Shown: positions 30,583 through 51,792 of the stretch, piece by piece
Layout: each line of letters begins with the position of its first letter
Position numbering within the stretch: the first letter of the stretch is position 1
Virus record (IMG/VR): IMGVR_UViG_3300044731_002337
Location: 124,001-188,000 of that record
DNA: 64,000 nt
Direction: 5' to 3' (one strand)
The notes under the pieces: generated by a model
Seen by the model: the letters and a program-made list of their open reading frames with translations, nothing else
Databases searched by the model: none
Told to the model about the DNA's origin: nothing
Program-made: the position numbers and the translations under genes

Positions 30583-31623
30583 GTTGTAATGCATCTCAGA
30601 CATTGGTCCATGCGTGTCGATTCATGGAATGTTTAATGGAAAAAAATGGTGTTAGTAAACAAGAGGTGAAGCATATGTACTCATCTGGACAAGAATGTGC
30701 ATTCTTATATCATCCCAAGATTAGTGTGATATTGTTTCGCCCTGATGATCCTACAACAACAACTTATTTAAAAATGAGTGTGTTAGATCCAGTATTCATT
30801 CCTACCGATACAGTGATTGAACAAGGGAAGAAGAAAACAGAAATACAAACCTCCAACTTAACTGAATCAGTGTGGAAACATTTTAGGGTATTTATTCTTT
30901 TTTTTTTGTCTTTCTCTTGTTTGTTTGTTTAATGTTATGATAGGCTACGTATCCTCTTGTGAAACGATGGATTATGGTCTCCTCAGACATTAATACATTT
31001 ACCAATACTCTATTACTAGAACTAATGTGGATGTCTGAATCAATGTCTATGCAACACTTTAAGTACATTGAATTGGGAGATCCTCGAATTATTACTGAAC
31101 ACAAGTTTCAACCATTGAGTGTGGAAAGAGTGGATAAGGCTCCAACTGAAAACTGTCGACAAATTCTAGTGCATGATATCTTTGCACGATTTTATGGAGC
31201 ACAAGTAGGGCATGTATTGAAATGTCAAGGTATCCATAGACAATCTGGTGAACAAACAGATTATTTACAGGTATATTTTTTTTCGTTTACATGTACTTTA
31301 CAGCTTATACTATGTTTTAGGTATCTTATATTCATTACATTAAAGGAAATAAGTTGAAACCAGCAAAACTTCCAGAACAAGCAAAACAGGAAAGTATTGT
31401 GTTGGAAGAAGAGGAAGAGGAGGATGAGGAACTGGAAGAAGAAGAAGAAGAAGAGGAGGAAGATGAAATAGAGGAAGTACAAGTAGAGGAAGAAACATCA
31501 GAGTCTGAAACTGAATCGGAAGAGGAATCGGAATCCGAGTCTGAGGATGAAGAGGAAGATGAAGATGATTCTGAATCGGATGAGGAGGACGAAGAGGATG
31601 ATGATGATGATGATGAGCAATAA
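30579..31623 (+). CDS. rpb5: RNA polymerase subunit RPB5 homolog with acidic C-terminal tail; three exons join(30579..30887,30944..31270,31321..31623)
   Basis: RPB5 C-domain ITEHKFQP...QILVHDIFARFYGAQVGHVLKC...YLQV; three track ORFs join in frame (939 nt) after removing two GT-AG introns. Confidence 0.8.
30888..30943 (+). other. Spliceosomal-type intron 1 of RPB5 (56 nt, phase 0)
   Basis: AGG|GTATTT...T-rich...TTTAAT...GATAG|GCT; splicing joins WKHFR to ATYPLVKRWIM in the frame of ORF 30959. Confidence 0.8.
31271..31320 (+). other. Spliceosomal-type intron 2 of RPB5 (50 nt, phase 0)
   Basis: CAG|GTATAT...TTTTAG|GTA; joins DYLQ to VSYIHYIKGNKLKPAK in the frame of acidic ORF 31354. Confidence 0.7.
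31405..31616 (+). repeat. Poly-Glu/Asp low-complexity coding repeat
   Basis: GAA/GAG/GAT runs. Confidence 0.9.
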
Positions 31624-31629
31624 ACACAT

Positions 31630-33669
31630 TTATGATAAAGAAGGTGGTTCTGGTGGTTGAGGTGGTGAAATGGAAGGTGAAGTGGGTAAGGAAGCTGGTA
31701 GTATATCTCGCGGTAATGAATCAAATGGAGGTAGATTTGATATCATAGTAATACGTTCATTGATACGTCGTTTCCATTGATCTGTAAAAGGTTGTTGTTC
31801 CAGGTCATCTACCAATGTAACGAAAAAGGGAATAGAAGCCCAGTTAGCTGACGTATGTTGTAAAGCACTTCGTAACGCATCATAAGGTTCTTCTAAAGGA
31901 TATTTCTGTAAAGCATAATTGAAAAAAGTGGATAGTAAATTAGGATTAGGTGGTAGTTCAGTCAGATTTACATAGAGTATTTGTCCATCGAGAGTTGTAG
32001 CTTGTTGAGTGAGCAAGTTGTACTGCATGACTTGTGGACTATAATCAAAAAACTTACGAATGGTAGCAAACACTTGATTGGCTTGTTGGCGAGTAAGTTC
32101 ACCTCGAATATCTAATTGCCGTTGTGGGTTAAGTTGTTTTCGCAAATACTCCCGTTTACTTAATCGATTAAATGCAGACCTAAATTCAATAGCACTTGAA
32201 AGTTTCATGGATGGGAAATGGTTAGCGTCATTATTAGTCGACATCATCTCTAGTTGAGAAGGATCTTGTTCGCGGCGTTGTACAACTTCATAAATAGGGG
32301 TTTTCAATAATTCATTCAATGTATGTGTATTTCTTTCATGTAATTCTTTGGCCTTGTCACGAACATCTGCTCGAGCTGGAATGACTGCAACGACGGGTTG
32401 GGCAGCGACTTCAGCCACATTATCTTTTTGAATGAGATTTCCTAGGCAAGTAGTAAATTGTTTAATGGCATCATAATTATCAATTTGAATATTGGCGGAT
32501 GCAGCCTTTCGATCATCATCTGGTGGCGTTGGAGCCGGATGTTTCATAAAATAAAGCAACATATCAAACATGGTCGTCAATAAATAATTCGCATTTGCCG
32601 CATCGAGTTCATATTCCTCAGTAAGAATTTGAAATAGATTGATTTGGGGATCACATGCATATTGATTGTCACCAAACAGGAAATTGGCTACATCATCTTC
32701 ATTTTGAGTGTACTTGCGAAATACATCTATAACATTCTTCCTAGTTTTGCATTTGAGTGTTATGTTATTACGGCGATATAAGGATAAGGCTGCAGTGCGC
32801 CAGGAAATGAGAAACTCGCATGCATATTGATGGTTTAGAATTTGACTACGATCTTCAGGAAAGCTGTAGGTTACGTGTGTGAATACATGGGAGAAAATAT
32901 TGGCAAAGTTGGAGGAGCTTTGATTGGTATGTCTCCAGAATAAGTTGAAAGGTGATTGTTTGAATTCAAATACCTTTTTGTTGTTCAAAGCTCGTGGTTT
33001 CAAGTGTTTGATGGGGCATGATTTATGTTTGTAGAGTCCACCTTGTTTATCTTGTGTGGATAAAGGTTCATGGCAAGCGGGGCACTGAATAGGTTTTTGG
33101 AAACATTCATGACAGACAGCATGTTCTTCTACGCCTTGATTATGAGTGTCGCAAACATAGTTCGTTTTGCAATAAAAACATGGGGCTATATTGGTGCGTG
33201 ATTGACATTCGTAGCATGTGATGGGGCATTTATGGTTGAATTCTTGTATGCCGCAAATGGGGCACTTTTGGATGGTGATGGTTGTACCTCCATATTCGGT
33301 GAGAACTGGGGAGCCATTATCTAATAGGGTGGATTTGAGACGATGAATGCGTAGCCAAGTGATGGTAATAGGATCGACATCCGTTTTGGGTAAGTACCAT
33401 TCTTTGGAGACGTCATAATAGGTATCTGTCTTATTTTGGAAGCGCATGAAATCGTACCATACGAGATCACCACGGACATGTCTACGCCAATAGACTTGAT
33501 GTTGACCTAATGAGAGGGATGGACAATGACGAATATCATCAGGTGGAATAACTTGGGGTAATGTTTTGGGTAAAGAATAAGGAGGCATCAATGGTCGAAG
33601 ATATTGTTCTTGAAAACATCTTATAAATGGTATTTCATTCTCATGATAACAAGAAGGTAAATGAATCAT
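31630..33669 (-). CDS. Hypothetical protein with multiple CxxC zinc-binding motifs
   Basis: CPICG, CYEC, CFYC, CHEC, CPACH. Confidence 0.7.
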   Translation of the reverse strand: MIHLPSCYHENEIPFIRCFQEQYLRPLMPPYSLPKTLPQVIPPDDIRHCPSLSLGQHQVYWRRHVRGDLVWYDFMRFQNKTDTYYDVSKEWYLPKTDVDPITITWLRIHRLKSTLLDNGSPVLTEYGGTTITIQKCPICGIQEFNHKCPITCYECQSRTNIAPCFYCKTNYVCDTHNQGVEEHAVCHECFQKPIQCPACHEPLSTQDKQGGLYKHKSCPIKHLKPRALNNKKVFEFKQSPFNLFWRHTNQSSSNFANIFSHVFTHVTYSFPEDRSQILNHQYACEFLISWRTAALSLYRRNNITLKCKTRKNVIDVFRKYTQNEDDVANFLFGDNQYACDPQINLFQILTEEYELDAANANYLLTTMFDMLLYFMKHPAPTPPDDDRKAASANIQIDNYDAIKQFTTCLGNLIQKDNVAEVAAQPVVAVIPARADVRDKAKELHERNTHTLNELLKTPIYEVVQRREQDPSQLEMMSTNNDANHFPSMKLSSAIEFRSAFNRLSKREYLRKQLNPQRQLDIRGELTRQQANQVFATIRKFFDYSPQVMQYNLLTQQATTLDGQILYVNLTELPPNPNLLSTFFNYALQKYPLEEPYDALRSALQHTSANWASIPFFVTLVDDLEQQPFTDQWKRRINERITMISNLPPFDSLPRDILPASLPTSPSISPPQPPEPPSLS

Positions 33670-33696
33670 GTTTGTTTTTTTTTTCTTGTTTTTTTT

Positions 33697-34272
33697 TTAT
33701 TTTGTGACTGAATAAATTTTTGGTGTTGTAATACTCCATTCACTTAAGTTTTCTTTCGATTTCTCATAAGTCTGTTGTAACCAGGAGATTAATGATTCGT
33801 TACTATTGGTAAATTGAATATCTGATTTTTTCATGACGACCAATGTGGCCGCGAAAGCCGCTAACGTATGCCATATAGAATGCCACAATTCATATTTGAA
33901 CGTAGTAACACTGGTATCTTCACGTGATCCATGAGTAAGGTAGGCAACGAATGCGGTAATACCCGTGCTGAAAATGGCCAATACACGCCAATGGAAGAAT
34001 CCGAGTTCAGCAGTTAATCGTAGGCCTAGAACTAGGATCACCATGACGGTAAGGCTAGCCCAAATTTCATCCGAGGTTGCGTGTCTGCATTCATTGGACA
34101 AGTGATACAGTGTAGAGAAGATGGCAGCCATAAAGAGGATGACAGATATGGCAACAGGTTGAGTGTAAAGAGAGATAAGGGCAGGGACAAACATAAGGGT
34201 GGAGGATACTTTTAAATACACTCTCATGTTCGAGTCATAATTGTTGTTGCTGTGATGATAATGATGATTCAT
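33697..34272 (-). CDS. CREST-superfamily multi-TM protein (TMEM8, ceramidase or PAQR-like)
   Basis: FSTLYH (SxxxH), a conserved Asp (SDEIW), HSIWH (HxxxH), several TM segments. Confidence 0.7.
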   Translation of the reverse strand: MNHHYHHSNNNYDSNMRVYLKVSSTLMFVPALISLYTQPVAISVILFMAAIFSTLYHLSNECRHATSDEIWASLTVMVILVLGLRLTAELGFFHWRVLAIFSTGITAFVAYLTHGSREDTSVTTFKYELWHSIWHTLAAFAATLVVMKKSDIQFTNSNESLISWLQQTYEKSKENLSEWSITTPKIYSVTK

Positions 34273-34805
34273 GATAATGTTGTTTTTTTATGATTTGTGA
34301 TTTTCTTTGTATGGTCATGACAGAGAATAATTCCCAATATAGAAGGCGTTCCCTGAAATCCACATCGACATGGTAGATATTTACAATGGAGTTCTCGATC
34401 CACACAATATTCGCACATGTCATCATTGTGTTGAAAATAATTCCAACAACAGTTATTGCAAAAAAAGTTGATAGGCCATGCTTGAGCCCATAATTGTTTC
34501 CAAGATACTTCTGCTTCTTTACACCATAGCCACCAATAATATCGAACACTTGTCCAAGGTAAGGAATAAGGTACATAGCCTTCACGTCGTAAAAAACTTC
34601 GCAAATCATTACCCTTTAAGTTGGTGGAAAGAGCATATTCAATCATTCGTTTTACAAGAATAGGCCATAAAGCAGTTAATTCTTCTATATTGATAAATGG
34701 GGCGGTTTTACGTAATGTATTCGGTGTCACCCAAGAACATAATTCAAGTAGAACAGTACGATTCATTTTTAATTGTGGATTTCTAAATGGGTATCGGAAG
34801 AACAA
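34269..34805 (-). CDS. Hypothetical Cys-rich protein
   Basis: 178 aa with CNNCC, CEYC and CRCG motifs. Confidence 0.6.
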   Translation of the reverse strand: MFFRYPFRNPQLKMNRTVLLELCSWVTPNTLRKTAPFINIEELTALWPILVKRMIEYALSTNLKGNDLRSFLRREGYVPYSLPWTSVRYYWWLWCKEAEVSWKQLWAQAWPINFFCNNCCWNYFQHNDDMCEYCVDRELHCKYLPCRCGFQGTPSILGIILCHDHTKKITNHKKTTLS

Positions 34806-34813
34806 AAGTAAAA

Positions 34814-35914
34814 CTATAAAAGTTTCCTGGCTTGATTCTTGACTGCTGAACTGAATTGTAAAACTTTACCTCCTGCATGTAATAAGATGGGTGCCCTGAG
34901 TGCAATGAAAATTTGATAGAAAATCAAGAGAAAGACAACGCCCACAATGACCATGACAAGGCTTGGTACTTGTTCAACAATTCTAGATAAAAGTTTGAAT
35001 ACCGTTACACCAATGAGAACTGTGTTATCGATGAATTCAGTTAAGGAGGATTGTAGTTCGATAACTTTGGATTTGGTTTTATAATCAATGGCTACCATCA
35101 TACGTGATTGTGTAATGTGTGATGAAACGAGTGTACTGTACATGGCAAGAGAAAGACGTTGTGTCACATTTTGAAGAAGTACAGAAGTTGAGCCAGGTTC
35201 AATGGTAACGCCTTGCATAATAATGGCTTGGCTTTTAATGGATTGTAAAGTAGAGGAAGTGATTATGTTTCGAATGGAATCCACCATGGACACACTAAAC
35301 CTATCAATTTCATTATCAGATTCAAGTTTAGTCCCCATTTGTTTCAATTTATCACGGTTTCTTTCCACTTCAATTTTGGCTTGGTTTTTCATACCGAATA
35401 CAAAGGCTTTTTGGAATTGGTTTGACGTGACATCGCATTCCAGGGTCATGGTGGCACTAAGTTCTTGGTTTAGGTTGACAACGAGACATTGGGAGCATAC
35501 ATAGTTGCATGTAGCTCGTAAATCTTGTAATTGCTGTGCAGTAAACTCTTGTGGAGTATATTGTGATTCAGGTAAAGATGCAGCCAAAGATTCTAATGAG
35601 ATGCGATCTTGGATAACTCGTTCAATTTGGGTTCGACAATAAGTGCAATTGGGATTTGTGCTTACACGTGTACCCATATCTGCATCACATGAGATATTCA
35701 CAGATTGACGTATATAAGAACCTTGGTCACATAGAGTAGTTGCATACATTAATCCATAAGCGATGATATTCGAGATGACCGTATTGGCAGTACTACCTAC
35801 CAGTCCAGTGACTTGATCTGCTTTGTAAAATGTAGCAATGTGATCTGCACCTGGAGTGTTATTGACCCCAACACAGTTTAGTCCTGTTTGAGTCTCCCAA
35901 TCACGCGAACACAT
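34814..35914 (-). CDS. Putative virion membrane protein, L1R/F9L-like
   Basis: Cys pattern QSVNISC...CTYC...CNYVCSQCLVVNLNQ...LEC and a C-terminal TM; no N-terminal myristoyl Gly. Confidence 0.45.
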   Translation of the reverse strand: MCSRDWETQTGLNCVGVNNTPGADHIATFYKADQVTGLVGSTANTVISNIIAYGLMYATTLCDQGSYIRQSVNISCDADMGTRVSTNPNCTYCRTQIERVIQDRISLESLAASLPESQYTPQEFTAQQLQDLRATCNYVCSQCLVVNLNQELSATMTLECDVTSNQFQKAFVFGMKNQAKIEVERNRDKLKQMGTKLESDNEIDRFSVSMVDSIRNIITSSTLQSIKSQAIIMQGVTIEPGSTSVLLQNVTQRLSLAMYSTLVSSHITQSRMMVAIDYKTKSKVIELQSSLTEFIDNTVLIGVTVFKLLSRIVEQVPSLVMVIVGVVFLLIFYQIFIALRAPILLHAGGKVLQFSSAVKNQARKLL

Positions 35915-35941
35915 GTTTTTCTTTTTTTTTCTTATATAAAA

Positions 35942-36502
35942 ATGTCATCATTGACCTTGTTAAAAGGTATTGGTAAAAAGAGAAGTGAAGAGTTTGAGTC
36001 ACAAGGTATCTATACAATAGAACAATTATCACAAGCTACTAAACTGACTCCTACCCAAGAAAAGTATCAAAAAGCAGCTATTGAATACTTACAATCAAAA
36101 GGAATTACAACTGTATCAACGACGACGACTCATAATACTTCAAGTGAAGAAGTAGACGAGACAAGTGAAAATGTGTGTATGAATTATGTATTTGATAAGC
36201 ATACATGGTTAGGTAAACAGGTTAAAATACCAGTTGGCGCGAATAATGTTATTCATAACGCTATCATTAAGGAATTATTATTAGAACATGGTGAACGATT
36301 AGTCATTTTATGTAAAGATATGGTGACTAAGAAAACATCCTTTTGGCAAATTCCTACATTGGCTACATTGAACTTTGAATTACCCCCTTTACGTATTACT
36401 CTTAGTGAAGCAGACATGGAATTGATTCAACATAATCTGGAATATATTTTGAGCACTCTTTGGCAAAGTGATTATATTCGTAGTTGTATTCAACCAGAGT
36501 AA
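35942..36502 (+). CDS. Protein with N-terminal helix-hairpin-helix DNA-binding motif
   Basis: LTLLKGIGKKRSEEFESQGIYTIEQL; start ATG 35942. Confidence 0.7.
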   Translation: MSSLTLLKGIGKKRSEEFESQGIYTIEQLSQATKLTPTQEKYQKAAIEYLQSKGITTVSTTTTHNTSSEEVDETSENVCMNYVFDKHTWLGKQVKIPVGANNVIHNAIIKELLLEHGERLVILCKDMVTKKTSFWQIPTLATLNFELPPLRITLSEADMELIQHNLEYILSTLWQSDYIRSCIQPE

Positions 36503-36507
36503 CTTCT

Positions 36508-37830
36508 TTAGGAATATAAATCCGGAAGTATTGGAATCGTATTGTACAAAGTAATAAAAAGTGCAAAGGTAAATAGTGTAGTTACTATAATCGTAAACCC
36601 ATTTGAATTGGTTTTTTCTGCTTCTGCTTCTTCTTGTGTTGATGATAAAAGTGAGGAAGTTATAGTTTTCAATTCATGTAGTATTTCATCGCATCGATGG
36701 GCTACCTCTTCGATTGAACAAGAAGTTACCTGCTCATTGATAGTTGTATTTATGGTATCCATACAGGTATTGTGAAGAGTGAGTATGACTCCATGTTGCG
36801 CCTTGAGACATTGTGTCAGTTCATTGTAGTGACGGGTACATTGGGCTAATATAGTTTGCTGTAATGCGTCAATGTGTCGTTGTTGTATTTGATTATTGTC
36901 TTGAAGATCCATTTGCCCCATAATTCGTTGAACAGTATTGTCATGATATAAAGTCATTTGTTGTTGCAACTCTGAACTAATGAAATGTTGGAGTTCTTGA
37001 TAATCTTTTTCGAGTCCATCGCAAAGACGTGTACCCAATTCCTCAGTTGTATTCTGCATAGCTGTGATAATATCCTCCTTACATGTAACACCATGATCCA
37101 TAAACGTATTGTGGAGCTTATCACTCTCTAACATAAATGTATTCTGAAGCAAAGTCGTCACATGATGGTGAAATTTGTCAAGTTGTCGTTTGTCATGTAA
37201 AAACCATTCTTCCTTGGAAGGTAAATGGGCAAATAATTCTTCCTTCGAAGGTAAATGGGTAAACAATTCTTCCTTGGTGGGTAAGCTGCGTGACAGATCA
37301 TCTTTAGAAGGTAAATGGCGAAATATTTCATCACGATAGGGTAATTGGCGAATCACATCTTCCTTTGTGGGCAGGTGTTTTACAATATCTTGTTTGGTTG
37401 GTAAACGGTTTTGTATTGTTGCTTCTGTTTTGGATAAGAATTCTTCCTTGGTTGGTAATAGGTGGTGAGAGGGAAGGTGAGCCATTATTTCATCCCGTGT
37501 TGGAAAATGATTAAGAATTTCTTGCTTCATTGGTAGTTGACTCACTAGCTCTTCCTTGGAGGGTAATCGATTAAGTATCTCTTCTCTGGTAGGTAAATGA
37601 GAGGTGAATTCTAGCTTGGAGGGTAATCGATTAAGTATCTCTTCTCTGGTAGGTAAACGTTGTAATAACTCTTCCTTGGTAGGTTCATCTTTGGAAAGGT
37701 GGTGTTTCTTAGGCTTGGGATGTTTCTTATGTTCATGGCAAGGATGTTGAGAGAGACAAGAGGTTGGACTAGGTAGAATAAATGATTCATTCGTACCATG
37801 GTTGTTAGGTAGTTGCTTGTGTTTATTCAT
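36508..37830 (-). CDS. Membrane-anchored protein with tandem 11-aa LP(T/S)KEE repeats
   Basis: More than a dozen LP(T/S)(K/R)(E/D)E-type units; C-terminal TM FTIIVTTLFTFALFITLY. Confidence 0.75.
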   Translation of the reverse strand: MNKHKQLPNNHGTNESFILPSPTSCLSQHPCHEHKKHPKPKKHHLSKDEPTKEELLQRLPTREEILNRLPSKLEFTSHLPTREEILNRLPSKEELVSQLPMKQEILNHFPTRDEIMAHLPSHHLLPTKEEFLSKTEATIQNRLPTKQDIVKHLPTKEDVIRQLPYRDEIFRHLPSKDDLSRSLPTKEELFTHLPSKEELFAHLPSKEEWFLHDKRQLDKFHHHVTTLLQNTFMLESDKLHNTFMDHGVTCKEDIITAMQNTTEELGTRLCDGLEKDYQELQHFISSELQQQMTLYHDNTVQRIMGQMDLQDNNQIQQRHIDALQQTILAQCTRHYNELTQCLKAQHGVILTLHNTCMDTINTTINEQVTSCSIEEVAHRCDEILHELKTITSSLLSSTQEEAEAEKTNSNGFTIIVTTLFTFALFITLYNTIPILPDLYS

Positions 37831-37883
37831 TGGCCTTTTTTATACACTTATTTCTGTTACGAGACCAATGCGACTAAACACGA

Positions 37884-37965
37884 GTTACCTCTCCAAATGA
37901 ACCTAAATGTTACCTCTCCAAATGAACCTAAATGTTACCTCTCCAAATGAACCTAAATGTTACCT
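37884..37965 (-). repeat. 25-bp tandem repeat (3 copies plus a partial), GGTAAC family in reverse orientation
   Basis: (gttacctctccaaatgaacctaaat) x3; reverse complement ggtaacatttaggttcatttggagaggtaac matches ggtaacttctggttcattcgaagaggtaac at 51.4 kb. Confidence 0.9.
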
Positions 37966-38028
37966 AAAGTGTGCATGATAATGGCTTGACAATAGTTCTT
38001 TTTGCATAAAAATGTGACTAATTTTATT

Positions 38029-38980
38029 TCATTGGATTACGGGAAAGGGAAGTAGTTCATTCACAGAAATATTTTCAGCAATGGCGATAATGGTGTCTGT
38101 AACTTGTTTCCATGTAAAAGGTAGTGATTGTGAGGGACCAGAAATGATCCATTGTGCATCACGGTATTCGCATGCCACAACAGCATTCTTGGGGAGAGGA
38201 TAAGGACAAATAGCGGCCGAAATGATGACATTATCTTTGGATTTGAGTAGATAGTCGCCTTGATAGAAGCGGTAGTATTGTACTGTCGAAGGAGTTCCAT
38301 CAGGCCAAGGTAATTCTCGAATCGATTCAAATGGTTGAATAGTACAATAAATGCGATGTGATCGTAATCGTAATTGGGGTATTACTTTAGATCCGTATGA
38401 TGATGAAGAAGAAGAAGAAGAAGATAATGCTTCAGATGAAGTATCCATGAAATCCAAGGCTTCAATAGGTAGCATGTAGGTAAATTTTAGAATATGACTC
38501 ATTTCCACTAGTGGTTTGACATGAAGTCCAAAGGGAATTTCAGGATGATGCACTACCTTATTATACAATGTGGGGTAAAGTGATGATTTCACTACGCAAG
38601 GGGATACAGAGATGGAGGTAGTTGAAGCAGTAGGACATTTCGAGATCATTTGAATGGCTTGAATGGCTAATTCCCATCGTTGATCGTACCTGAGATGTTT
38701 GGCAGGGTTTCCACACATCATATAACAATCCATAATCGTAAAGCAAAATCCTTGGTCGTTAAGTTGAACCATTTCTCCATCGAGTACGGTTCCAGCAAAT
38801 AATGGGATAGGTAGTTTGGAAGGCATATGTTTCAGTTTGGTGGTCTTCTTTTGTTGATCCATGAGAAAGAGTTGTATGCAGTTCTTGTATGTGGTGAATA
38901 ATAATAGCCCGCGGATACCATTTAAGTAAGGTACCATGACATAACGTTGAGGTTGGAATTCGAGTTTCTTGGGTCGAAAG
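38029..38980 (-). other. Degenerate mRNA-capping guanylyltransferase plus OB domain fused to RPB1
   Basis: YVMVPYLNGIR (motif I KxDG changed to YLNG), TVLDGEMV (III), FTIMDCYMMCG (IIIa), YDQRW, VVACEY...W, TIIAIAENISVNELL. Confidence 0.75.
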
Positions 38981-41900
38981 GGGATTACATCTTGAATCAT
39001 TTGAAAGTGATAGCCACTACCAAGACCCATATTCTTATTGCACATGGCAGCAGCTGCAATAGTATTCCCTGGATCCCACCTTCCCATATCTACATTTTCC
39101 ATAACGTGTCTAGATGACTCTTCAAACGAGGCTTGCTGCATAGGTGCAATACGTTTGGCAGCTTCATTCTTCTTGTATCCTTCATGTATACCAGTCATGG
39201 TCATGTATCGAGCCATGAGTTCCAAGTGTCGTGCATCAGTAGAATCTCCCATGACTAACACGAATTCATGGGTCAACACTTGGGTTGTGGCATAAACGCC
39301 CATAAACTTTTGGGTATCGCCGGTATGAGTGCTGTACGATTGCTGAACATCGACTAATGGGTGCGTATTCCAAATTGAAAAATCAGATTGGTCCGTAATG
39401 CATACCCAGCGATTTGAAGCTTGTTGTTCAATAATATACTTGGAGATGCCATCCAATTTACCCCTCACAATGGTTTGGTGAAAGATATTGTAAGCGACGC
39501 CGTACAGGGCATGTGTGGTTGGATTCTTGACCTTGCACTTGATTTGTCTCAAGGCGAAAGTCCAAATGCCCACGGAAGGTGTTAAACGAATACAAAATAG
39601 GGTCTTGTCTACTTTGTGAATCGCGGAAATGGGAATTTGGATGGTATGGTGTAATGCGAGAATGATATTGTAGTCTTGTACCAAATAATATGCTTTGAGC
39701 TTCGGGTCAATATGGAGGCGGATAGTCATACTTGATTCATCAATCTTAGGGTAGTCAGAGAGGATTTCAGAGAGATATACAGTTCTCCAGGTCATGGCCG
39801 TATAATGGACTTCAGCTTCCGTGACATGAGGTAGAAAGACAATATTCATCATGGCTAGGCTATTATTGGCATCAATCAAGTTATTCAATTTGTTGACTCC
39901 TGTAACTTGCGTATTCTTTTTCCCAGAGGAGTGAGGCGACTTTAAATTACCTTGTGTGTATACTTCTCCCACACTATGAGTCGCATTCATTCCAATAGCT
40001 TCTCCTGGCAAAATGGTTCTTCTTTGTATCGTATGGTAAATCAATCGAAGTAACTTGTACCAGGCAACACTAGACAACTTCCATACCACCAATACATTAT
40101 GAGGGCAGCACCACACACGTAATAAAACATGAAGCTTGTGGTGTTGGGCAGGAACAAGTCTCTCCTTGACCATACTTTGCCAGATATAGGTAAACGACGT
40201 AATGATTTCGGTTTCCATAAGATCAGGTGATGAAGTATAAGTGGTGGCTTGTTGAAAGAGATGCTTGATATGAAAGGGAGATTTGAATGTCAAGTCTTGA
40301 TCCTTGATTTTATCCCAAAGTAACCATGACTCACGATAGAATACATGATGATGATGATTAGGCCAAAGTTCTAGAGTTGGCGGTGTAATTGTTTCCCATA
40401 CCAAGTATTGAGGGTCAAGAGAATCACCTCCATAAGTAAACCAAACGGTTGGACCAGGTTTATGGATATCTTCTTTGCGAAAGGCATGTTGTCTTCGATT
40501 GCCAGAATAACTGTCTACTGCATGGCCAAAAGTGTCTGCAATAATACCCATATTACAATAGGCCATCTTCTTCTCCAAGTAGCCTGATTGTGAAGTACCC
40601 TTGATCTTGTTGATCACTGATTCCGTGGTAGGTTGTGCTTGGGTCATTAGATCATGAAAAGTGAGACCCATAGCATAAGGATGTTTGATAAAGCCATGCG
40701 CTACAAGTGATTTGTCGTGAGGGTGGAAATGGCTAGTCACATTAGGAATTCGTTCATGTGTGAGATACGCTTGTCCCACAACACCCATCATTTGAGATAA
40801 GGATGCCCAATTTGCCTTGGTGCCACTTTGAATCATAGCCAAGTATCCATTGTGTAACGTATTTCGATCCCTTGCTGTTACCAACTCTTCAATCCGATCT
40901 TGAATCGACTTGGTGTAAAACTGAATGTGCTGTCCAACTACATCTTCAGGTTGCTCCTGCATATTTTGAAGCTTGTGATAATTGGGACATGAATCCGCAT
41001 CTTCCCAATACATTTGGTGATAGCTACAAGAGTGTCCACGCATGTCTAGATATTCTTGGGTGATTAGATAGCCTTCATACAGGAAATCCATGGCTTCATC
41101 GAGGGAATGGTACATGATGATATCTCTAAGGACGCCATTGAGAACTTTTTCCGTAAACACGGTATGAATGTGAATGGAGCTAGGTAGGATACAATGCATC
41201 ACTTGTCTCCCGGTCCATAATTGGCGAGGTTTCCAAACTGCAGGTGGAGGTATGGTGATGAACCGAGTCACATGTCCTAGTAACACCGAGACTTGATCCT
41301 TGGTCAAAAATGTATCTTCATGGGTCAATAAAAAAGCGCCAATCACTGGATTTTGACTGAATTTAATCCATAGTCCTCCATCTTTCATGGTGTGAAACTT
41401 GACCGCCATAATCTCCATCACCTCTGCCCGAGCTTCAATGGTTTGAGGAATGTGTACACTTAGTTCATCGCCATCACAATCCGCATTAAAAGGTAAAAAA
41501 ACACTCACGTGAAGATTAATGACAAACGAATTGGGAATCACTTTGACTTTGAATCCCATAGTCGATCCACGATGGAGTGTTGGTGCTCGATTCACAATCA
41601 CCCAATCATCCTCCAAAATGTGACGACGAACATAAGCCACGTCATGCACGTTAATGTCGCGACGGTTATCATAGTATTCCAAATCAATGGTGCGTCCATC
41701 CTTCATTTGCATGGAATTGGCGCCAGGATAGTGATGTGGGCCATTCAAAATCCATTTGTGAGCTTGGTTCATGTTGAAGGAAGATACGGGGACGTTAATG
41801 GTCAGTCCCATACATGTGGATTGCGGGAGGCCACAGTAAGTAGGGTGAATCCATGTACAACCTTCCAATACAAGTCGTGCATAATGATATTTTCGCCACG

Positions 41901-43109
41901 CCACAATAAAGCCTTGCATACGGCTACTTTGTTTCGATTTGCTAGTCTTCTTAAACTTGGTATCCACTGAATTGGGGGTTTTACCATATTGGGCATTCTT
42001 GGGGATTAGTTTGCGATACTTTTCAAAGTGGAATGCAGAGATTTGGTTTTGGAGGTTTCGCCAGGCACATTGATTGGTCACGTTGCCACAAGACGCTTCA
42101 TTGGAAAGTTTACATTTGCTCAGTTTCTGGTTAATGAGTTGAAGCTGGGCCCGGTATTGTTGCCGTTGTTGAATATTGAGTTGTTTTCGTTCTTCGCTGG
42201 TTAAGGATTCTTTTTGAAAGCAAACTTTAAAATCTGGATGAATGAATCCCTTGTATAGATATTGGGAAAGAATAATGGGGTCCTTGGATTGTTGCAATTT
42301 CATTTCGAGTAAAAGTTTGCTTTGGAGGACATTTTTGAGCATCTTGGTCCAATCATTGGGGTATTGTTTAGAGCCATTTTTGGTAGGGAAAGTACTATTA
42401 GGTCTAGTGGTGAGTGCCGGGACAGCTAGAGCCGAAAACATTCGAGCCTTGGGTAAGTTGTATTGTCCAAGTCCCATAATATGCATCATTTGTTCATTCT
42501 TCGAAATGTCCTCCAAGAGTTTTTGAATTTCAAATGGACCAAACGAAATGGGCTTCCATGATGGATTGGATTGGTAAAGTTGAAAATCAGTCTTGGAAAG
42601 TGTTACAACTCCCCGTATAATATTATCATGACCCGATTCTGTTGTCCATTTGATATAGGATTTACCACATTCACATGCCCTGAAGAAACGAGTATATTTA
42701 AGTAACGTATTGAGTCGTTTTTCAGAGGGTAGTTGAAGAACTTTCTCGCACATATGGGAAGTAATGCGGAGGCGTTGACAATAAAAGCAAACTAGATTGA
42801 GTATTTTCAAAAGGGTTGACATGGCGCCTACATGGAAACAGGGAATAGGTAATTCCATATGTCCAGTATGTCCAGGACAATTATGGGTTGTCTCTCCACA
42901 TTGCTCACATAATGAATCCCATGATTTACATCCCAAAACACCTACAAGAAGAAAAGTAAAGAAAGATCAAAGGGCGAAAAAAAAAATGTACCTGAAGTAA
43001 GATCTGTATTGGTTTTGATTTCTAATACACTTTGTTTACGAACACGATCCGAGTCAATAAGGAAACATTGTAATGCATCTACTTCACGTAATGGTGGAAG
43101 TGAATCCAT
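38029..43109 (-). CDS. rpb1: RNA polymerase largest subunit (RPB1) with fused C-terminal guanylyltransferase-like domain; exons complement(join(38029..42941,42992..43109))
   Basis: CEQC...CPGHTGH, CFYC, NRAPTLH, FNADCDGDE, GTSQSGYLEKK, PGEAIG, EVYTQGNLKSPHSSG, LGSGYHF; exon 1 supplies RVRKQSVLEI; spliced length 5031 nt is in frame; an upstream in-frame ATG at 43178 is possible. Confidence 0.93.
42942..42991 (-). other. Spliceosomal-type intron in RPB1 (50 nt, phase 1)
   Basis: CAG|GTACAT...polypyrimidine...TTGTAG|GTG; joins TDLTSG to VLGCKSWDSLCEQC. Confidence 0.85.
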
Positions 43110-43161
43110 TGTGATTACATTACTTTTATTATGTTGGTTTTTTTCGGATCGGAATCTTGAG

Positions 43162-43419: not shown

Positions 43420-43485
43420 TTCTCTTTTTTTTTTATTTTACTTTGCTTATGGTTTTTTTTTTCTCCGATAGGGGATAGAATCATA

Positions 43486-44259: not shown

Positions 44260-44262
44260 TCT

Positions 44263-45915: not shown

Positions 45916-45982
45916 TTTCTCTTTTTTATTAATATGATTTTTTTTCAGGGGGAAAGGAAAAAAGAATTGTGGGTGATAAGAA

Positions 45983-46288
45983 ATGAGGTATGGATATCGT
46001 GAAGAACGGAAGTATATTGAAGAAACTAGGCCCAATTCTTATCTAGAACTTTCCCCGCCACCAGTGAATCAAGGTACAGCTGAAGTAAAATGGTGGCGCA
46101 TCAGTGATATTTCATCATTTCTCGTATGGTATAAACGTCCATGTAAATATATAATTCATGAGGTGTTAAATGAGGGGGAGGTTCAGACGCCGCCATGGAA
46201 AGATGATTATGTAAACTTTATCAAACTGGCAGACAGAAAGTCAATGTATGAGTATTATTATGTTATGACCAATAAAGGATATATTTAA
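45983..46288 (+). CDS. Hypothetical protein
   Basis: 101 aa; the stop codon lies in the MITE left TTAA. Confidence 0.55.
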   Translation: MRYGYREERKYIEETRPNSYLELSPPPVNQGTAEVKWWRISDISSFLVWYKRPCKYIIHEVLNEGEVQTPPWKDDYVNFIKLADRKSMYEYYYVMTNKGYI

Positions 46289-46437
46289 CCTTTTAGGTTG
46301 TACCGAAAAACCGCCAGATTTTATTACGGAATACAAAAAAATCGTAGGATCATAATAAGTTCTGCGTTGCAGAGTTCAAACATAATAATTTTTAATAAAT
46401 TCCAAGGGCTTCTCATTACCCCTGGCGGTTTAGAAGG
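46289..46437 (+). mobile_element. piggyBac-like MITE, copy 2 (149 bp), flanked by TTAA
   Basis: TTAA at 46285-46288 and 46438-46441; nearly identical to 4317..4444 apart from an internal insert of about 21 bp. Confidence 0.7.
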
Positions 46438-46490
46438 TTAATAAACTATTTTTTTTTTATTTTTATTGTGAATCACACACATGTATTTGT

Positions 46491-48245: not shown

Positions 48246-48343
48246 TTTTTTTCGGTAAGTCTTCTTTTTGTTTTTTTTTATGCAGTGTGTAAAAAAATTT
48301 TTCAAGGACTCAAGAACATGTAGATAAAAAAAAAAGATTATGT

Positions 48344-48790
48344 TTATTGTCCATTTACCCATTCTAAAACTCCTTGGCTTGAACCATCGCCATCAGGGCG
48401 TCGTACACGCGTTGATAATTTAAGATTGCGCTTTTCCCCTCTCTTTTTCTCTTCTCGATAACGTTCGACCATTTGTTCTGCGGACAATTGTTCATTTCTT
48501 CGCCATGAATCGATAAAGGAGGAAAATAAACGTACTAAATCTTCTTCTTTTAATGTGGGTTCAGATTTGTGTTTATCTACCGTAATCCATGGACCAGCAC
48601 CTTGACCGGAGATATCGATACACGACTTATTAAAACCTCTCAACATGACTTCAATAATTTCCTTTTCATACTTGTCAATAGTTGTCTTTTTTTCTTTGAC
48701 ACCACTATTAATGGATTCAATTTCAGACTTACCTTGTCGGTATGCAGAGTACTTTTCTACTAGTATCTGTTTCGCTTGTTCTGAATTCAT
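48344..48790 (-). CDS. Hypothetical coiled-coil protein (DUF5760-like)
   Basis: KEKKTTIDKYEKEIIEVM pattern; TAAATG start. Confidence 0.55.
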   Translation of the reverse strand: MNSEQAKQILVEKYSAYRQGKSEIESINSGVKEKKTTIDKYEKEIIEVMLRGFNKSCIDISGQGAGPWITVDKHKSEPTLKEEDLVRLFSSFIDSWRRNEQLSAEQMVERYREEKKRGEKRNLKLSTRVRRPDGDGSSQGVLEWVNGQ

Positions 48791-48871
48791 TTATATATAC
48801 TTTTTTTTTTCTAATATTTGTGACTGGATCTTTTTTTATTTCGCGTTTGTTCCGATCTGGAGGGGACATAG

Positions 48872-49798
48872 TTGGAAGGAAACAATTTGATCATGCATCA
48901 TTTATGGAAGCAGTTAATGATGAGCAAGGTATATATGACGGATGTGTTTAAAGTTTGGAAGTTTGAGATGTATATCAAGGATCGTCGACCAATTACATCA
49001 GTTCATTTGGCAAAGAATTCGCAAGGTGCCTGGTGTGTGTTCAAGACGATTAATGTGGGCCGTTGTATGTCCATGTTTGTTGAAGTCTTGGTGTTACGTG
49101 TCATGCAAAATACGCCGGGAATAGTACGTATGGAAGAGTGGGCATACAATGTGGCACATGATGTAGTGATTATTCAATTTCCTCGAATGGTGATGGATTT
49201 GCAGCAGTTCATGTATAAGTGGCGTCATCATGCAAGGGTACGTCGAAAATATATGTTGGCCAATGTAGCGGGTCTATTGGAGACATTGGTGGAAGTGCAT
49301 CGCCATGGTATTGTTCATCGAGATCTCAAGCCCGCCAACATTTTATTGGATGACAAGGAATATTGGTTTTTGCATGATTTTGGAAATTCGATATGGGAGC
49401 ATAAGCCGGGACAAGAGTATGCTACAGACATGGCAAATACAGTAACACACCGTCCTCCGGAATGTATGGGTAAAGATCGAATGGTAGCCTATGATCAAAA
49501 GATTGACGTTTGGGCTTTGGGAATCATATGTTATGAATTGTGGTTTGGATCATTACCTATTGAAAGCTACGAGTACAATGTGATTCGTGATTTCTATCTA
49601 CTAAATCCTGTGGAAACATGGGCAACTTTATGGTCCTTACCTGAACCATGGATGAACTTTTTTTACAAGTGTCTCCAATCCAACCCTCAACATCGATTTT
49701 CAGCATATCAACTCATGGCATTACCTTTATTCAAGGAGGTCTTACCTGGTAATGCCAAGAATTCCCGATCTCCTATCGCCATTCCATTACATACCTGA
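48872..49798 (+). CDS. Ser/Thr protein kinase
   Basis: VFK, HRDLKPANIL, DFG, THRPPE, DVWALG; no canonical Gly-rich loop. Confidence 0.92.
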   Translation: MEGNNLIMHHLWKQLMMSKVYMTDVFKVWKFEMYIKDRRPITSVHLAKNSQGAWCVFKTINVGRCMSMFVEVLVLRVMQNTPGIVRMEEWAYNVAHDVVIIQFPRMVMDLQQFMYKWRHHARVRRKYMLANVAGLLETLVEVHRHGIVHRDLKPANILLDDKEYWFLHDFGNSIWEHKPGQEYATDMANTVTHRPPECMGKDRMVAYDQKIDVWALGIICYELWFGSLPIESYEYNVIRDFYLLNPVETWATLWSLPEPWMNFFYKCLQSNPQHRFSAYQLMALPLFKEVLPGNAKNSRSPIAIPLHT

Positions 49799-49804
49799 CG
49801 AGTG

Positions 49805-51783
49805 ATGGATAACAATATATGTCCTGTTTGTTCAATTCAATGTGCCAATGTCGAGTCATTTCGTGACCATGTAGCCCATGAACATGAAGACTATAAACAT
49901 TTTGCATGTGAATTGCATATTGCGGAACAACCTTGCAAGGCTAGATACAAGTATAAGAAGGATCTACTCATTCATCAAAAGAAAGTGATTCATGATCAAG
50001 TGAGGCAATATGTATCTCCAGCGTATCATCAACTAAGATTAAGGACAAAACATGCTACGTCATGGGTGCATTGGACCTCATTGTATGTTCAATATAAATC
50101 TCCCAGTGATCCGGTATTGTCGAATGAGCAAAAAATGTCAGTGGAGCAGTTGATGAGTAGGCTGAAGCAGGAGGAGATGTGGGTGGAAGAAGCAGTTTAT
50201 GATTCATGGCAATTTGAAGAAATGGTGGAGCAATTGGAGAATTATTGGAATCAGGCCAAGACAATTGGAAATCAATTACGTCTATTATTTTGGCATGTCC
50301 TGTATAAGTTCTGTGTGGATCCTTTACTTTCGGATTCGGTGGTTCATTTTTTACACAAGAGGTCCAGTAAATATTTTATCAAGGCGACCAAAATTGTGCA
50401 AGGATCATTAGGTGTACAAATCATGGACCCTTATCAAATGGTGGAACTACGTTATCGAATCTTGGTAGAACTTCAAAAGCAACAGCAAGAAGTATTGGAT
50501 CCATTTATTCTTCAATACTATCGTGAGAGATCATCTAAGATGCCATTACTCGAGTTTGGATTGAAATTAAGGTGTTGGATAGATTTGATGATTCGGTTTA
50601 CCAATATTCCTATGAGAATTCAAGCGACCAAGGAACTTCATTTAGGGTATCCGTTTCGAAAGACGGATGTGGCCGAACATCATGTGGCAAGATTATTATA
50701 TGAGAATGGTGTCTTTACCCGTTTATTCATGTTTGATAAAGTGGGCAAAACAGGTAAGCATTAATGATTTTTTTGTTTGTTTGTTTGTTGTTAACTATGC
50801 ACAAAAAAGGTGCTCATCGTCCAATTCGATGTCCTTTACCAGGATTTATAACTCCTTACTTATTATTCTACATTAAGTATTGTCGACCAACGGAAAAGGA
50901 GAATTCCTTGGTATTTCTCAATGCGACGGGCAGTGCATGGAAACAAGCATCAAGGGATATTAAGATGTATATGCAAGATGTATTGGACATTCAAGTGAAT
51001 GCATTAGATCCTTCAGGTCGTTTTGTTCATGGGTCAAGGTCTATCATGTTGGCGAATTATGCATTGCGTGTACGATTTGATCCATTGAAGTTACAACAAT
51101 TTGCTACCTTGATGAGACATTCGTTTGCGACGATGAATTCTTATTACTTGTTATGGACGGATTGGGCGACAGCGAGACTTGCCATGTCCGACTTTAATCA
51201 AGCGTTTGGTTTATCTGCCCCCGAAGAAAAACCATGTGATTTTTCAGCCTTTGATGTCCATTTTTCTTTCACTCAGGGTATAATGGAAGAAAAAGAAGTA
51301 TCGCCACAGATTGAAACATTATCATGTAAACCTGCAGTAAATTCTCGTTCATTCGAAGAGGTAACATCGTCATTCGAAGAGGTAACTTCTGGTTCATTTG
51401 AAGGGGTAACATCGTCATGCAAACCTTTGGTAACTTCTGGTTCATTTGAAGGGGTAACATCGTCATGCAAACCTTTGGTAACTTCTGGTTCATTCGAAGA
51501 GGTAACATTGTCATGCAAACCTGCGGAAACATCGTCATGCAAACCTGCGGTACAAGAGCAAAAGAGTGGAAATGGTTGTGACAAGTGTGGTAAAGTAATG
51601 ACGATTTATGGTCCTTATGGGAAGAGGAAGCATGTGAAGCAATATGGATGTTATTGGTATGAATGTAAGGATTGTGAGTTGAAGAAATGGATACCATTAG
51701 GATATATGACGGAATATAGTCATTCACGAAAATCCAAGAATCACGATAAGATTATGGCATTTATTAAAGCTTCTTTGAAATAA
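49805..51783 (+). CDS. C2H2 zinc finger plus tyrosine-recombinase-like protein; exons join(49805..50753,50810..51783)
   Basis: N-terminal CPVC...HVAHEH and C...HQKKVIH; TNIPMR, DK, HGSR, MRH and SYY give the R-K-H-R-H-Y set; two track ORFs join in frame (1923 nt). Confidence 0.7.
50754..50809 (+). other. Spliceosomal-type intron (56 nt, phase 1)
   Basis: CAG|GTAAGC...TTAAC branch-like...AAAAG|GTG; the spliced product DKVGKTGAHRPIRCPL aligns with the intronless paralog DDKNMNSHLPIIVPV. Confidence 0.85.
51314..51550 (+). repeat. Tandem array of 48-bp GGTAAC-family units and sub-units inside the CDS
   Basis: VTSGSFEGVTSSCKPL repeats with degenerate flanking copies. Confidence 0.9.
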
Positions 51784-51792
51784 TAGATCTTG

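What the first reader, a model, noticed from the sequence alone, without database searches (positions are those of the whole stretch)
30888..50809. Spliceosomal introns in a giant-virus-type genome, concentrated in its own RNA polymerase genes
Seen in sequence: four introns of 56, 50, 50 and 56 nt, all GT-AG and very T-rich, each restoring the reading frame between adjacent broken ORFs. All four upstream exons end in AG or AGG, and three downstream exons begin with GT, an AG|GT proto-splice pattern. Three of the four lie in RPB1 and RPB5. Established: spliceosomal introns occur in some nucleus-dependent giant viruses (pandoraviruses, chloroviruses, some mirusviruses) and in endogenised giant viruses. 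Inference: the viral transcription machinery cannot be made until the host spliceosome processes these transcripts. That implies an obligatory early nuclear phase, possibly a splicing-gated switch to autonomous transcription; alternatively the introns were gained after endogenisation.
Basis: partly seen in the sequence, partly recalled or inferred. Interest (0 to 1): 0.9.

Follow-up and report, generated by a model that had tools for sequence, protein, structure and literature searches.

The report
Tiny spliceosomal introns in giant-virus genes
Four 50-56-base GT-AG introns interrupt three genes of an uncultured freshwater giant virus, two of them RNA-polymerase subunits, so the virus probably needs its host's nuclear splicing machinery, as pandoraviruses and mirusviruses are already thought to.

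Summary
All are GT...AG, T-rich and not multiples of three.

ORF logic alone proves nothing, because random GT..AG pairs bridge ORFs just as often. Comparison with four related metagenomic viruses is decisive. The RPB1 intron and both RPB5-like introns are missing base-for-base from every relative, whose ORFs run straight through. The fourth intron is shared with the sister virus, at the same site but 46 nt long and with diverged sequence. A third virus has its own 44-nt GT-AG intron elsewhere in that gene.

An RPB1 tree makes the three polymerase-gene introns recent gains. The window is 100% identical to independent assemblies from Lake Mendota samples, so these are not artefacts. There is no Rfam hit and no stable fold, so they are not self-splicing introns.

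The "nuclear phase" reading is a reasonable inference and is already published as a concept. "Concentrated in RNAP genes" is only suggestive: RPB2 has no intron and only 22% of the genome was seen. Endogenisation is disfavoured but not excluded. Verdict: a new member of a known kind.

The parts
30579..30887 (+). RPB5-like gene, exon 1. The ATG at 30579 overlaps the stop of the upstream M43 peptidase gene. An upstream in-frame ATG at 30516 is less likely.
   Evidence: Aligns to the N-terminal part of the intronless orthologues in L007, L008 and L009 (A7; tblastn). The start is inferred from the orthologue N-termini.
30888..30943 (+). Intron 1 of the RPB5-like gene: 56 nt, GT..AG, phase 0, 66% T, TTAAT with its A 12 nt from the 3' end.
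   Evidence: Exactly absent from L007, L008 and L009. Has an in-frame stop if retained (sequence). Motif positions.
30944..31270 (+). RPB5-like gene, exon 2. Holds the conserved C-terminal RPB5-type motif (...ITEHKFQP...ARFYG..VG.V...).
   Evidence: A7. PDB profile hits to RPB5.
31271..31320 (+). Intron 2 of the RPB5-like gene: 50 nt, GT..AG, phase 0, flanked by the direct repeat AGGTAT.
   Evidence: Exactly absent from L007, L008 and L009, where the frame continues into the same ...VxYxxSIKGNK... and acidic tail.
31321..31623 (+). RPB5-like gene, exon 3: short conserved stretch plus a poly-acidic tail of about 75 aa.
   Evidence: The tail is present in all three orthologues (A7).
42992..43109 (-). 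RPB1 exon 1: 39 codons plus the first base of a split Gly codon.
   Evidence: 83-87% identical to the N-termini of the intronless RPB1 proteins P0003 and L007.
42942..42991 (-). RPB1 intron: 50 nt, GT..AG, phase 1, 60% T. Its 3' TAG is an in-frame stop if the intron is retained.
   Evidence: Absent base-for-base from L002/L007, L008, L009 and the outgroup L010. More distant RPB1 proteins are also continuous across the site.
38029..42941 (-). RPB1 exon 2: Rpb1 domains 1-5 plus a C-terminal domain resembling the mRNA-capping guanylyltransferase.
   Evidence: Pfam. PDB hits to eukaryotic Pol II RPB1.
49805..50753 (+). Gene 'g4' exon 1: C2H2-like zinc finger at the N-terminus, function unknown.
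   Evidence: 80% identical to the L007 orthologue. Weak Zn_SUZ12 hit.
50754..50809 (+). g4 intron: 56 nt, GT..AG, phase 1, TTAAC with its A 16 nt from the 3' end.
   Evidence: Same site in L007 but 46 nt and a diverged sequence. Absent from L008.
50810..51783 (+). g4 exon 2: highly conserved domain followed by C-terminal repeats.
   Evidence: A9 and A10.
59327..62758 (+). RPB2, an uninterrupted ORF. Serves as the intronless comparator among the polymerase genes.
43148..43154 (-). TTCCGAT promoter-like motif, about 40 nt upstream of the RPB1 ATG.
49763..49769 (+). TCCCGAT promoter-like motif, about 40 nt upstream of the g4 ATG.
30536..30542 (+). CTCCGAT variant of the motif, about 40 nt upstream of the RPB5-like ATG.
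   Evidence: Sequence.

Best explanation
The four elements are genuine U2-type (GT-AG) spliceosomal introns in the genome of an uncultured, deep-branching giant virus from Lake Mendota. The virus encodes no known splicing machinery in the part seen. The pre-mRNAs of RPB1, the RPB5-like subunit and g4 must therefore meet the host spliceosome, which means at least these genes are expressed through the host nucleus.

Shown: the introns exist, they are precise, and they must be removed for the proteins to be made. Three of them (RPB1 and both RPB5-like introns) were gained after the split from the sister virus. The g4 intron is older and shared with that sister.

Inferred:
- Removal is by the host spliceosome.
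- There is a nuclear step for a class of genes marked by a TTCCGAT-like upstream motif.
- Introns accumulate in this class because only transcripts that pass through the nucleus can both acquire and tolerate them.
For: Precise presence or absence against orthologues:
- RPB1.
- RPB5-like introns 1 and 2.
- The g4 intron is at the same site in the window (56 nt) and L007 (46 nt), with unalignable intron sequence between highly conserved exons, and is absent from L008.
- L008 has its own 44-nt GT-AG intron at another g4 site.
- A systematic scan finds only these.

Intron features:
- All six have GT..AG termini, lengths that are not multiples of three, and a YTNAY motif whose A lies 12-16 nt from the 3' end.
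- By hand, a random indel has GT and AG at its ends with probability of about 0.004, and all six do.
- Retention gives early stops or frameshifts and removes essential parts, including the RPB1 zinc motif and the conserved RPB5 C-domain.

Evolution:
- The RPB1 tree is ((window, L007) 89/94, (L008, L009) 100), with L010 outside. Single gains are therefore more parsimonious than repeated losses.
- At the three window-specific introns the last exon codon is a synonymous variant giving AG|G (TCA, AGG, CAG). Intronless relatives have TCT/TCG, CGA and CAA. This fits selection for splice-site strength or a preference for such insertion sites.

Exclusions:
- No Rfam family matches anywhere in the window.
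- Folds of each intron with its flanks are no more stable than shuffles, z from -0.8 to +1.2.
- The same sequence, introns included, appears in independent assemblies: Logan SRR27430816, Logan SRR12658723 and JGI 3300037541, all 100% identical. The Lake Mendota co-assembly 3300059473 has the same broken gene calls.

Precedent: pandoraviruses (PMC5995976) and mirusviruses (PMC12768974).
Against: - There is no RNA evidence. No spliced RPB5 product exists in the protein collection.
- The 5' splice sites are weak beyond GTA/GTT.
- The genome looks equipped for autonomous, cytoplasm-style transcription: RPB1 fused to a capping-enzyme-like domain, RPB2, RPB5-like, a Nudix/Dcp2-like decapping enzyme, and Erv1/Alr just outside the window. 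This sits awkwardly with nuclear expression, although pandoraviruses show the same mixture.
- The host is unknown, so intron length and branch motif could not be matched to it.
- Only 64 kb (plus about 9 kb) of roughly 295-299 kb was examined.
Confidence: 0.8

Rival explanations
1. The contig is an endogenised giant-virus element in a eukaryotic chromosome. The introns were acquired there, as in decaying or latent GEVEs, and are spliced as part of host-type expression.
For: - Spliceosomal introns are typical of endogenous giant viruses, for example punuivirus in Chlamydomonas (bioRxiv 10.64898/2026.10.09.758095).
- g4 and its paralogue have a motif pattern reminiscent of tyrosine recombinases, by eye only.
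- Sequences are 100% identical across samples, which a host-borne element would also show.
- SNF2 and HMG-box genes are present.
Against: - The window is about 87% coding on both strands, with long intact ORFs and no host-like stretch.
- Only four tiny introns were found in about 60 genes.
- Exons are conserved with synonymous divergence from relatives, including intact RNAP, RNR and kinase genes.
- Four related viruses from other metagenomes keep the same synteny.
- The intron-bearing genes carry the same virus-type upstream motif as intronless genes. In punuivirus, by contrast, intron-bearing genes form a host-like module.
Confidence: 0.1
2. The intervening sequences are not spliced from RNA. 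They are skipped by the ribosome (programmed translational bypassing, as in T4 gene 60 or the mitochondrial 'byps'), or removed by some virus-specific, non-spliceosomal mechanism.
For: The lengths of 44-56 nt are in the range of known bypass elements. The RPB1 and g4 introns have identical GGT codons at take-off and landing (sequence).
Against: - All six elements have GT..AG ends and a branch-like motif. Bypassing needs neither.
- The two phase-0 RPB5-like introns have no matching take-off and landing codons.
- No hairpin or other stable structure is present.
- Exon ends have evolved towards the AG|G splice consensus.
Confidence: 0.03
3. The insertions are simply disruptive. RPB1, the RPB5-like gene and g4 are pseudogenes in this strain.
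For: No transcript evidence. Prokaryote-style gene callers split all three genes.
Against: - Exons on both sides stay open and conserved over 4.9 kb of RPB1.
- The g4 intron has persisted in two diverged lineages with conserved flanking exons.
- A virus with its only RPB1 broken would not persist unchanged across several samples.
- All the insertions have splice-site ends.
Confidence: 0.04
4. The elements are assembly or homopolymer artefacts.
For: Each window intron contains a T7-T10 run.
Against: The sequence is identical in at least three further independent assemblies with DNA available. The elements are 50-56 nt, not 1-2 nt. Homologous introns with different sequence occur in relatives.
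Confidence: 0.01

Closest known systems
Spliceosomal introns of pandoraviruses (and Mollivirus)
   Same: GT-AG introns in a minority of genes of a giant virus that also encodes its own multisubunit RNA polymerase. They are read as evidence for an early nuclear, host-dependent phase (PMC5995976; PMC5413956).
   Different: - Here the introns are 44-56 nt, although I did not retrieve pandoravirus intron lengths for comparison.
- The lineage is unrelated and uncultured.
- Nothing is known about virion content or RNA.
- Here the gains can be dated to after the split from a sister genome.
Spliceosomal introns of mirusviruses, especially intron-poor Demutovirales
   Same: - Low intron density: 0.042 per kb reported there against about 0.06 per kb here.
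- Intron positions vary between close relatives.
- Canonical GT-AG ends.
- The 'evolutionary trap' idea that introns in early genes tie the virus to the nucleus (PMC12768974).
- The window also has RING, Snf2, RNR and RNAP genes, which are listed there as common mirusvirus functions.
   Different: - The mirusvirus length distribution peaks near 80 bp. These are 44-56 nt.
- The branch consensus WCTAAC is matched only loosely.
- No HK97-type virion gene was seen, so membership of Mirusviricota is untested.
- The RPB1 and RPB2 here have very few relatives in 5.8 billion proteins.
Self-splicing group I introns in RPB1/RPB2 of Marseilleviridae, mimiviruses and clandestinovirus
   Same: The same genes (the viral RNA polymerase large subunits) are interrupted (PMC5413956; PMC8383183).
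   Different: Those introns are hundreds of bases long, structured and detected by Rfam. Here there is no Rfam hit and no structure, but there are GT-AG ends.
Intron-bearing latency module of the endogenous giant virus punuivirus (Chlamydomonas)
   Same: Host-type GT-AG introns mark a subset of the genes of a giant virus.
   Different: Punuivirus introns average 176 bp. They sit in host-like latency genes that lack the viral promoter. Here the intron genes include core RNAP subunits and share the virus-type upstream motif.
Introners and intron transposition
   Same: The two 56-nt introns share a (TTTG)3 run found nowhere else in the window. The two 50-nt introns share the start GTAYAT(8-10)CG. 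AGGT-type direct repeats flank the introns.
   Different: The similarity is short and low-complexity. There is no family of near-identical copies, and no candidate source (host genome) was available.

Membership tests
U2-type spliceosomal intron | GT at the 5' end and AG at the 3' end | tested here: met
   All four in the window, plus the two in relatives.
U2-type spliceosomal intron | Branch-point-like YTNAY upstream of the 3' splice site, with a pyrimidine-rich tract | tested here: met
   The motif's A lies 12-16 nt from the 3' end in all six. T content is 0.46-0.66 in the window introns. This is a weak test, because the motif is common in T-rich sequence.
U2-type spliceosomal intron | Precise absence from orthologous genes, with exon continuity restored on removal | tested here: met
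U2-type spliceosomal intron | Removal from RNA by the spliceosome (spliced transcripts observed) | not testable with these tools
   No transcript data. No spliced product in the protein collection.
Group I / group II self-splicing intron | Conserved catalytic RNA structure, with a length of hundreds of bases | tested here: not met
   No Rfam match in the window at gathering thresholds. Length is 50-56 nt. Fold z-scores run from -0.8 to +1.2.
Archaeal/tRNA-type (bulge-helix-bulge) intron | A BHB motif spanning both junctions | tested here: not met
   MFE structures of each intron with 20-nt flanks show no helix pairing the two junctions and no excess stability.
Programmed translational bypass element | Matching take-off and landing codons, a stop after take-off, and a stabilising hairpin | tested here: not met
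   Matching GGT codons occur only at the two phase-1 introns. There is none at the phase-0 introns, and no hairpin.
Introner (transposon-derived intron family) | Several introns with high sequence similarity | tested here: inconclusive
   The pair i1/g4 scores above all 300 shuffles, but only through a (TTTG)3 run. The other pairs are not significant.
RNA polymerase subunit RPB5/RpoH (identity of the gene holding two of the introns) | Sequence or fold match to the RPB5 C-terminal domain | tested here: inconclusive
   No Pfam hit even for full-length orthologues. The top two PDB profile hits are RPB5, with E 0.18 and 0.51 and a sensible alignment. The top two Foldseek hits are chain E (204-205 residues, taken to be the RPB5 homologue) of the ASFV RNA polymerase structure, E 8e-3, but the model's pLDDT is 50.
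Nucleocytoviricota (giant viruses proper) | Double-jelly-roll major capsid protein, A32 packaging ATPase, VLTF3, D5 primase-helicase, PolB | not tested
   None of these was found in the window or the roughly 30 kb of flanking gene lists. Present are RPB1, RPB2, RPB5-like, both RNR subunits, a Ser/Thr kinase, a weak RuvC-like hit and Nudix/Dcp2, with Erv1/Alr next to the window.
Mirusviricota | HK97-fold major capsid protein, portal, triplex proteins, terminase | not tested

The most novel reading that the evidence does not exclude
A virus lineage caught in the act of intron gain. Three introns entered the genes of its own RNA polymerase after the split from a sister genome. At least one (RPB5-like intron 1) may have been copied from the older g4 intron, by reverse splicing or a tiny introner. 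All of them lie in genes of one promoter class (TTCCGAT). Under this reading, intron gain is progressively locking an otherwise transcription-autonomous virus into a nuclear step. The Lake Mendota 20-year series could show the gain in real time.
Probability: 0.12. Interest if true: 0.8.

Novelty: new member of a known kind. Interest (0 to 1): 0.55.

Why it matters
Spliceosomal introns are the clearest genomic sign that a large DNA virus sends transcripts through the host nucleus. Here they sit in the virus's own RNA polymerase genes, in a lineage that otherwise looks equipped for autonomous transcription and whose RPB1 even has a capping-enzyme-like domain fused to it. Three of the introns are demonstrably young.

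This gives a clean natural example for the "evolutionary trap" idea and for studying how new introns arise. Intronless sister alleles are available, the same virus recurs across samples of a 20-year lake time series, and a possible donor intron lies in the same genome.

It also warns that prokaryote-style gene calling splits core marker genes of such viruses. That can distort marker-based phylogenies and completeness estimates.

Tried and rejected
1. ORF-bridging statistics. GT..AG pairs that join open frames are as common as decoy pairs, so that argument was dropped in favour of comparative evidence.

2. Further introns in the window.
- Every junction between adjacent same-strand ORFs was inspected. 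No candidate resembled the four.
- A 50-nt GT-AG candidate at 48309-48358 (minus strand) was rejected because part of that stretch is conserved coding sequence in L008.
- Nothing convincing turned up in about 9 kb beyond the window.

3. T-runs in the introns as terminators for the viral polymerase, which would 'gate' these genes to host Pol II. Rejected: sense-strand T7+ runs occur 11 times in ordinary coding sequence and are not enriched 3' of genes.

4. g4 as a tyrosine recombinase. The conserved R..K..HxxR..RH..Y pattern is visible by eye. Pfam, a PDB profile search and Foldseek on a low-confidence model gave no support.

5. Phylum and family assignment. The closest solved RPB1 structures are eukaryotic Pol II, not ASFV. 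RPB2 has only four relatives above 33% identity and no named virus among them. The SNF2 protein is INO80/Rad54-like. No capsid gene was found, so the assignment is unresolved.

6. More relatives. The metagenome scan with the RPB5-like profile returned only the two contigs already held.

7. Sample accessions in the literature. Only 3300059473 was found, and it is the Lake Mendota co-assembly.
Full report
**What is there**

The window is part of IMG/VR contig IMGVR_UViG_3300044731_002337 (294,773 bp).
- 30888-30943: 56 nt, plus strand.
- 31271-31320: 50 nt, plus strand.
- 42942-42991: 50 nt, minus strand.
- 50754-50809: 56 nt, plus strand.

All four begin GT and end AG, and T content is 46-66%. 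The upstream exons end AG or AGG. Three downstream exons begin GT. The phases are 0, 0, 1 and 1. No length is a multiple of three. Each segment, if retained, gives an early in-frame stop or a frameshift.

**Is it more than chance?**

I therefore looked for relatives.

IMG/VR holds a syntenic contig (L002/L007; RPB1 72% identical). A protein search found further RPB1 relatives, and I fetched their contigs (L008 and L009 from metagenome assembly JACCDN01; L010-L012).

The results:
- The pieces tile the intronless orthologues with no residue missing or added (A7).
- In the DNA alignments the gaps fall exactly on the GT...AG boundaries. This holds for RPB1 and for both introns of the RPB5-like gene.
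- The fourth intron sits at the same site in L007, but there it is 46 nt with unalignable sequence between well-conserved exons. It is absent from L008.
- L008 has its own 44-nt GT-AG intron elsewhere in the same gene.
- An all-against-all split-HSP scan over the shared 24 kb recovers exactly these six and nothing else.

Six independent indels with GT and AG at their ends, none a multiple of three, cannot be coincidence.

**Not an artefact**

The same sequence, both RPB5-like introns included, is 100% identical in contigs from Logan SRR27430816, Logan SRR12658723 and JGI 3300037541. The 299,086-bp contig of JGI 3300059473 has the same broken gene calls around RPB1, g4 and the RPB5-like gene. 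That sample is the Lake Mendota 20-year co-assembly.

**What kind of intron?**

- No Rfam family, group I and II introns included, matches anywhere in the window.
- Each intron folded with its flanks is no more stable than shuffles. This rules out self-splicing introns, bulge-helix-bulge introns and hairpin-dependent bypass elements.
- All six carry a YTNAY motif (TTAAT, CTTAT/TTTAC, TTTAC, TTAAC, CTAAT, CTAAT) with its A 12-16 nt from the 3' end.
- At the three window-specific introns the last exon codon is a synonymous variant that creates AG|G: Ser TCA, Arg AGG and Gln CAG. The intronless relatives have TCT/TCG, CGA and CAA. Spliceosomal recognition would predict that pattern.

The best reading is short U2-type spliceosomal introns. 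RNA-level proof is missing, and no spliced product is in the protein collection.

**Which genes?**

*RPB1* is unambiguous, with Pfam domains 1-5. Its closest solved relatives are eukaryotic Pol II subunits.

*The 'RPB5' gene* has no Pfam hit, even for the full-length orthologues. A profile of three orthologues finds RPB5 as its two best PDB matches, with a sensible alignment of the C-terminal domain (E 0.18 and 0.51). A low-confidence model (pLDDT 50) finds the ASFV RNA polymerase chain E (204-205 residues, taken to be the RPB5 homologue) as its two best fold matches. I call it a probable RPB5-like subunit. It has a conserved poly-acidic tail.

*The fourth gene (g4)* has an N-terminal zinc finger and a highly conserved domain with paralogues (52364-53404, and in relatives). 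By eye, its conserved residues resemble a tyrosine recombinase. No tool supported that.

*RPB2* is an uninterrupted ORF.

**History**

An RPB1 tree gives ((window, L007) 89/94, (L008, L009) 100), with L010 as outgroup. The RPB1 intron is absent from all of them and from more distant homologues. The two RPB5-like introns are absent from L007, L008 and L009. Single recent gains in the window's lineage are the parsimonious reading.

The g4 intron predates the window/L007 split, or else was lost in L008.

The two 56-nt introns share a (TTTG)3 run found nowhere else in the window. The two 50-nt introns share the start GTAYAT(8-10)CG. This hints at copying between sites, but the similarity is short and of low complexity.

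**Context and mechanism**

The window and its flanks encode:
- RPB1 with a C-terminal capping guanylyltransferase-like domain, a fusion shared by the whole clade.
- RPB2 and the RPB5-like subunit.
- Both RNR subunits, the large one with an intein.
- A kinase.
- A Nudix/Dcp2-like enzyme.
- A weak RuvC-like hit.
- SNF2, RING and HMG-box proteins.
- Erv1/Alr.

All three stop codons are used.

A TTCCGAT-like motif lies 27-53 nt upstream of the ATG of RPB1, RPB2, g4, the kinase, both RNR genes and a few others. Eleven of the 15 matches in the window are placed this way, although the motif is under-represented overall. The RPB5-like gene has a one-base variant, and an NCCGAT core is kept upstream of the orthologues in relatives.

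All three intron-bearing genes therefore belong to one promoter class together with intronless genes. I infer that transcripts of this class pass through the nucleus, where they can both acquire and tolerate introns. The concept is the one published for pandoraviruses and mirusviruses. A dedicated 'splicing-gated switch' is not supported by anything I could test. The idea that the introns' T-runs terminate the viral polymerase was rejected.

**Rivals**

- Endogenisation is disfavoured by the dense intact coding (about 87%), by synteny with conserved exons in four relatives, and by the shared virus-type motif. The contig ends were not seen.
- Translational bypass fails for the two phase-0 introns and lacks hairpins.
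- Pseudogenisation is contradicted by exon conservation and by the persistence of the g4 intron in two lineages.

**Novelty**

Spliceosomal introns in giant viruses are established, as is the nuclear inference drawn from them. Introns in viral RPB1/RPB2 are known, but mostly as group I introns.

New here:
- The lineage has very few relatives in the databases searched. Whether it belongs to Nucleocytoviricota or Mirusviricota is unresolved.
- The introns are very short.
- They were demonstrably gained recently, inside polymerase subunit genes.

I rate it a new member of a known kind, of moderate interest.

Noticed in passing
window 38029-39300 (-), the C-terminal ~420 aa of RPB1; also L010 14000-15484: RPB1 carries a C-terminal domain resembling the mRNA-capping guanylyltransferase (PF01331), sitting where eukaryotic RPB1 has its CTD. 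The score is 21 bits here and 47 bits in the outgroup L010, and the domain is precomputed in five relatives. This looks like a clade-wide fusion of polymerase and capping enzyme.
   Followed up: partly
window 1882-1888, 22743-22749, 26158-26164, 34793-34799, 43148-43154, 48850-48856, 49763-49769, 58205-58211, 58222-58228, 59277-59283: The motif TTCCGAT (TYCCGAK) lies 27-53 nt upstream of the start codons of RNR small and large, RPB1, RPB2, the kinase, g4 and others. It is under-represented elsewhere in the window. An NCCGAT core is kept upstream of RPB1 and RPB5 orthologues in relatives. It is probably a promoter element of one gene class.
   Followed up: partly
window 22780-26124 (-): The ribonucleotide reductase large subunit is 1114 aa, with a weak Hint-domain hit (E 5.8e-4, below Pfam's cut-off) between its N-terminal and barrel domains. 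This suggests an intein.
   Followed up: no
whole window: G exceeds C on the plus strand in every 2-kb bin (GC skew +0.01 to +0.37), although genes lie on both strands. The cumulative skew rises monotonically.
   Followed up: no
window 49805-51783 (+) and 52364-53404 (-); L007 2-1301; L010 328-1890: g4 belongs to a small paralogous family with a conserved R..K..HxxR..RH..Y pattern that looks like a tyrosine recombinase by eye. Sequence, profile and fold searches gave no support. g4 also has C-terminal SFEEVTS/SCKPxVTSG repeats.
   Followed up: partly
window 31400-31620 (+): The RPB5-like protein ends in a tail of about 75 aa made almost entirely of Glu, Asp and Ser. The tail is conserved in length and character in all three orthologues.
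   Followed up: no
L008 3756-3799 (-): The relative L008 has its own 44-nt GT-AG intron (GTTTGT...CTAAT...TAG) at a different site in g4 (around aa 57). It lacks the intron shared by the window and L007.
   Followed up: yes
window 30919-30929 and 50772-50789; 31271-31285 and 42977-42991: The two 56-nt introns share a (TTTG)3 run found nowhere else in 64 kb. The two 50-nt introns both start GTAYAT(8-10)CG. This could mean copying between sites or parallel slippage.
   Followed up: partly
window 36508-37830 (-): A 440-aa ORF with a weak homing-endonuclease-associated (HNH) repeat hit (E 3.5e-5, just below Pfam's cut-off) lies directly downstream of RPB1. It is poorly conserved in relatives, at about 30% over the N-terminal half only.
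   Followed up: no
window 20974-37584, 25828-34909, 29402-31487, 51465-63547, 1-4339: Contigs from Logan SRR27430816, Logan SRR12658723 and JGI 3300037541 are 100% identical to the window over 2-16.6 kb. JGI 3300059473, which holds the 299-kb version, is the Lake Mendota 2000-2019 co-assembly.
   Followed up: yes
window 30579-30582: The probable start codon of the RPB5-like gene overlaps the stop of the M43 metallopeptidase gene (ATGA). Likewise, only 3 nt separate the kinase stop from the g4 ATG. Genes are very tightly packed around the intron-bearing genes.
   Followed up: no
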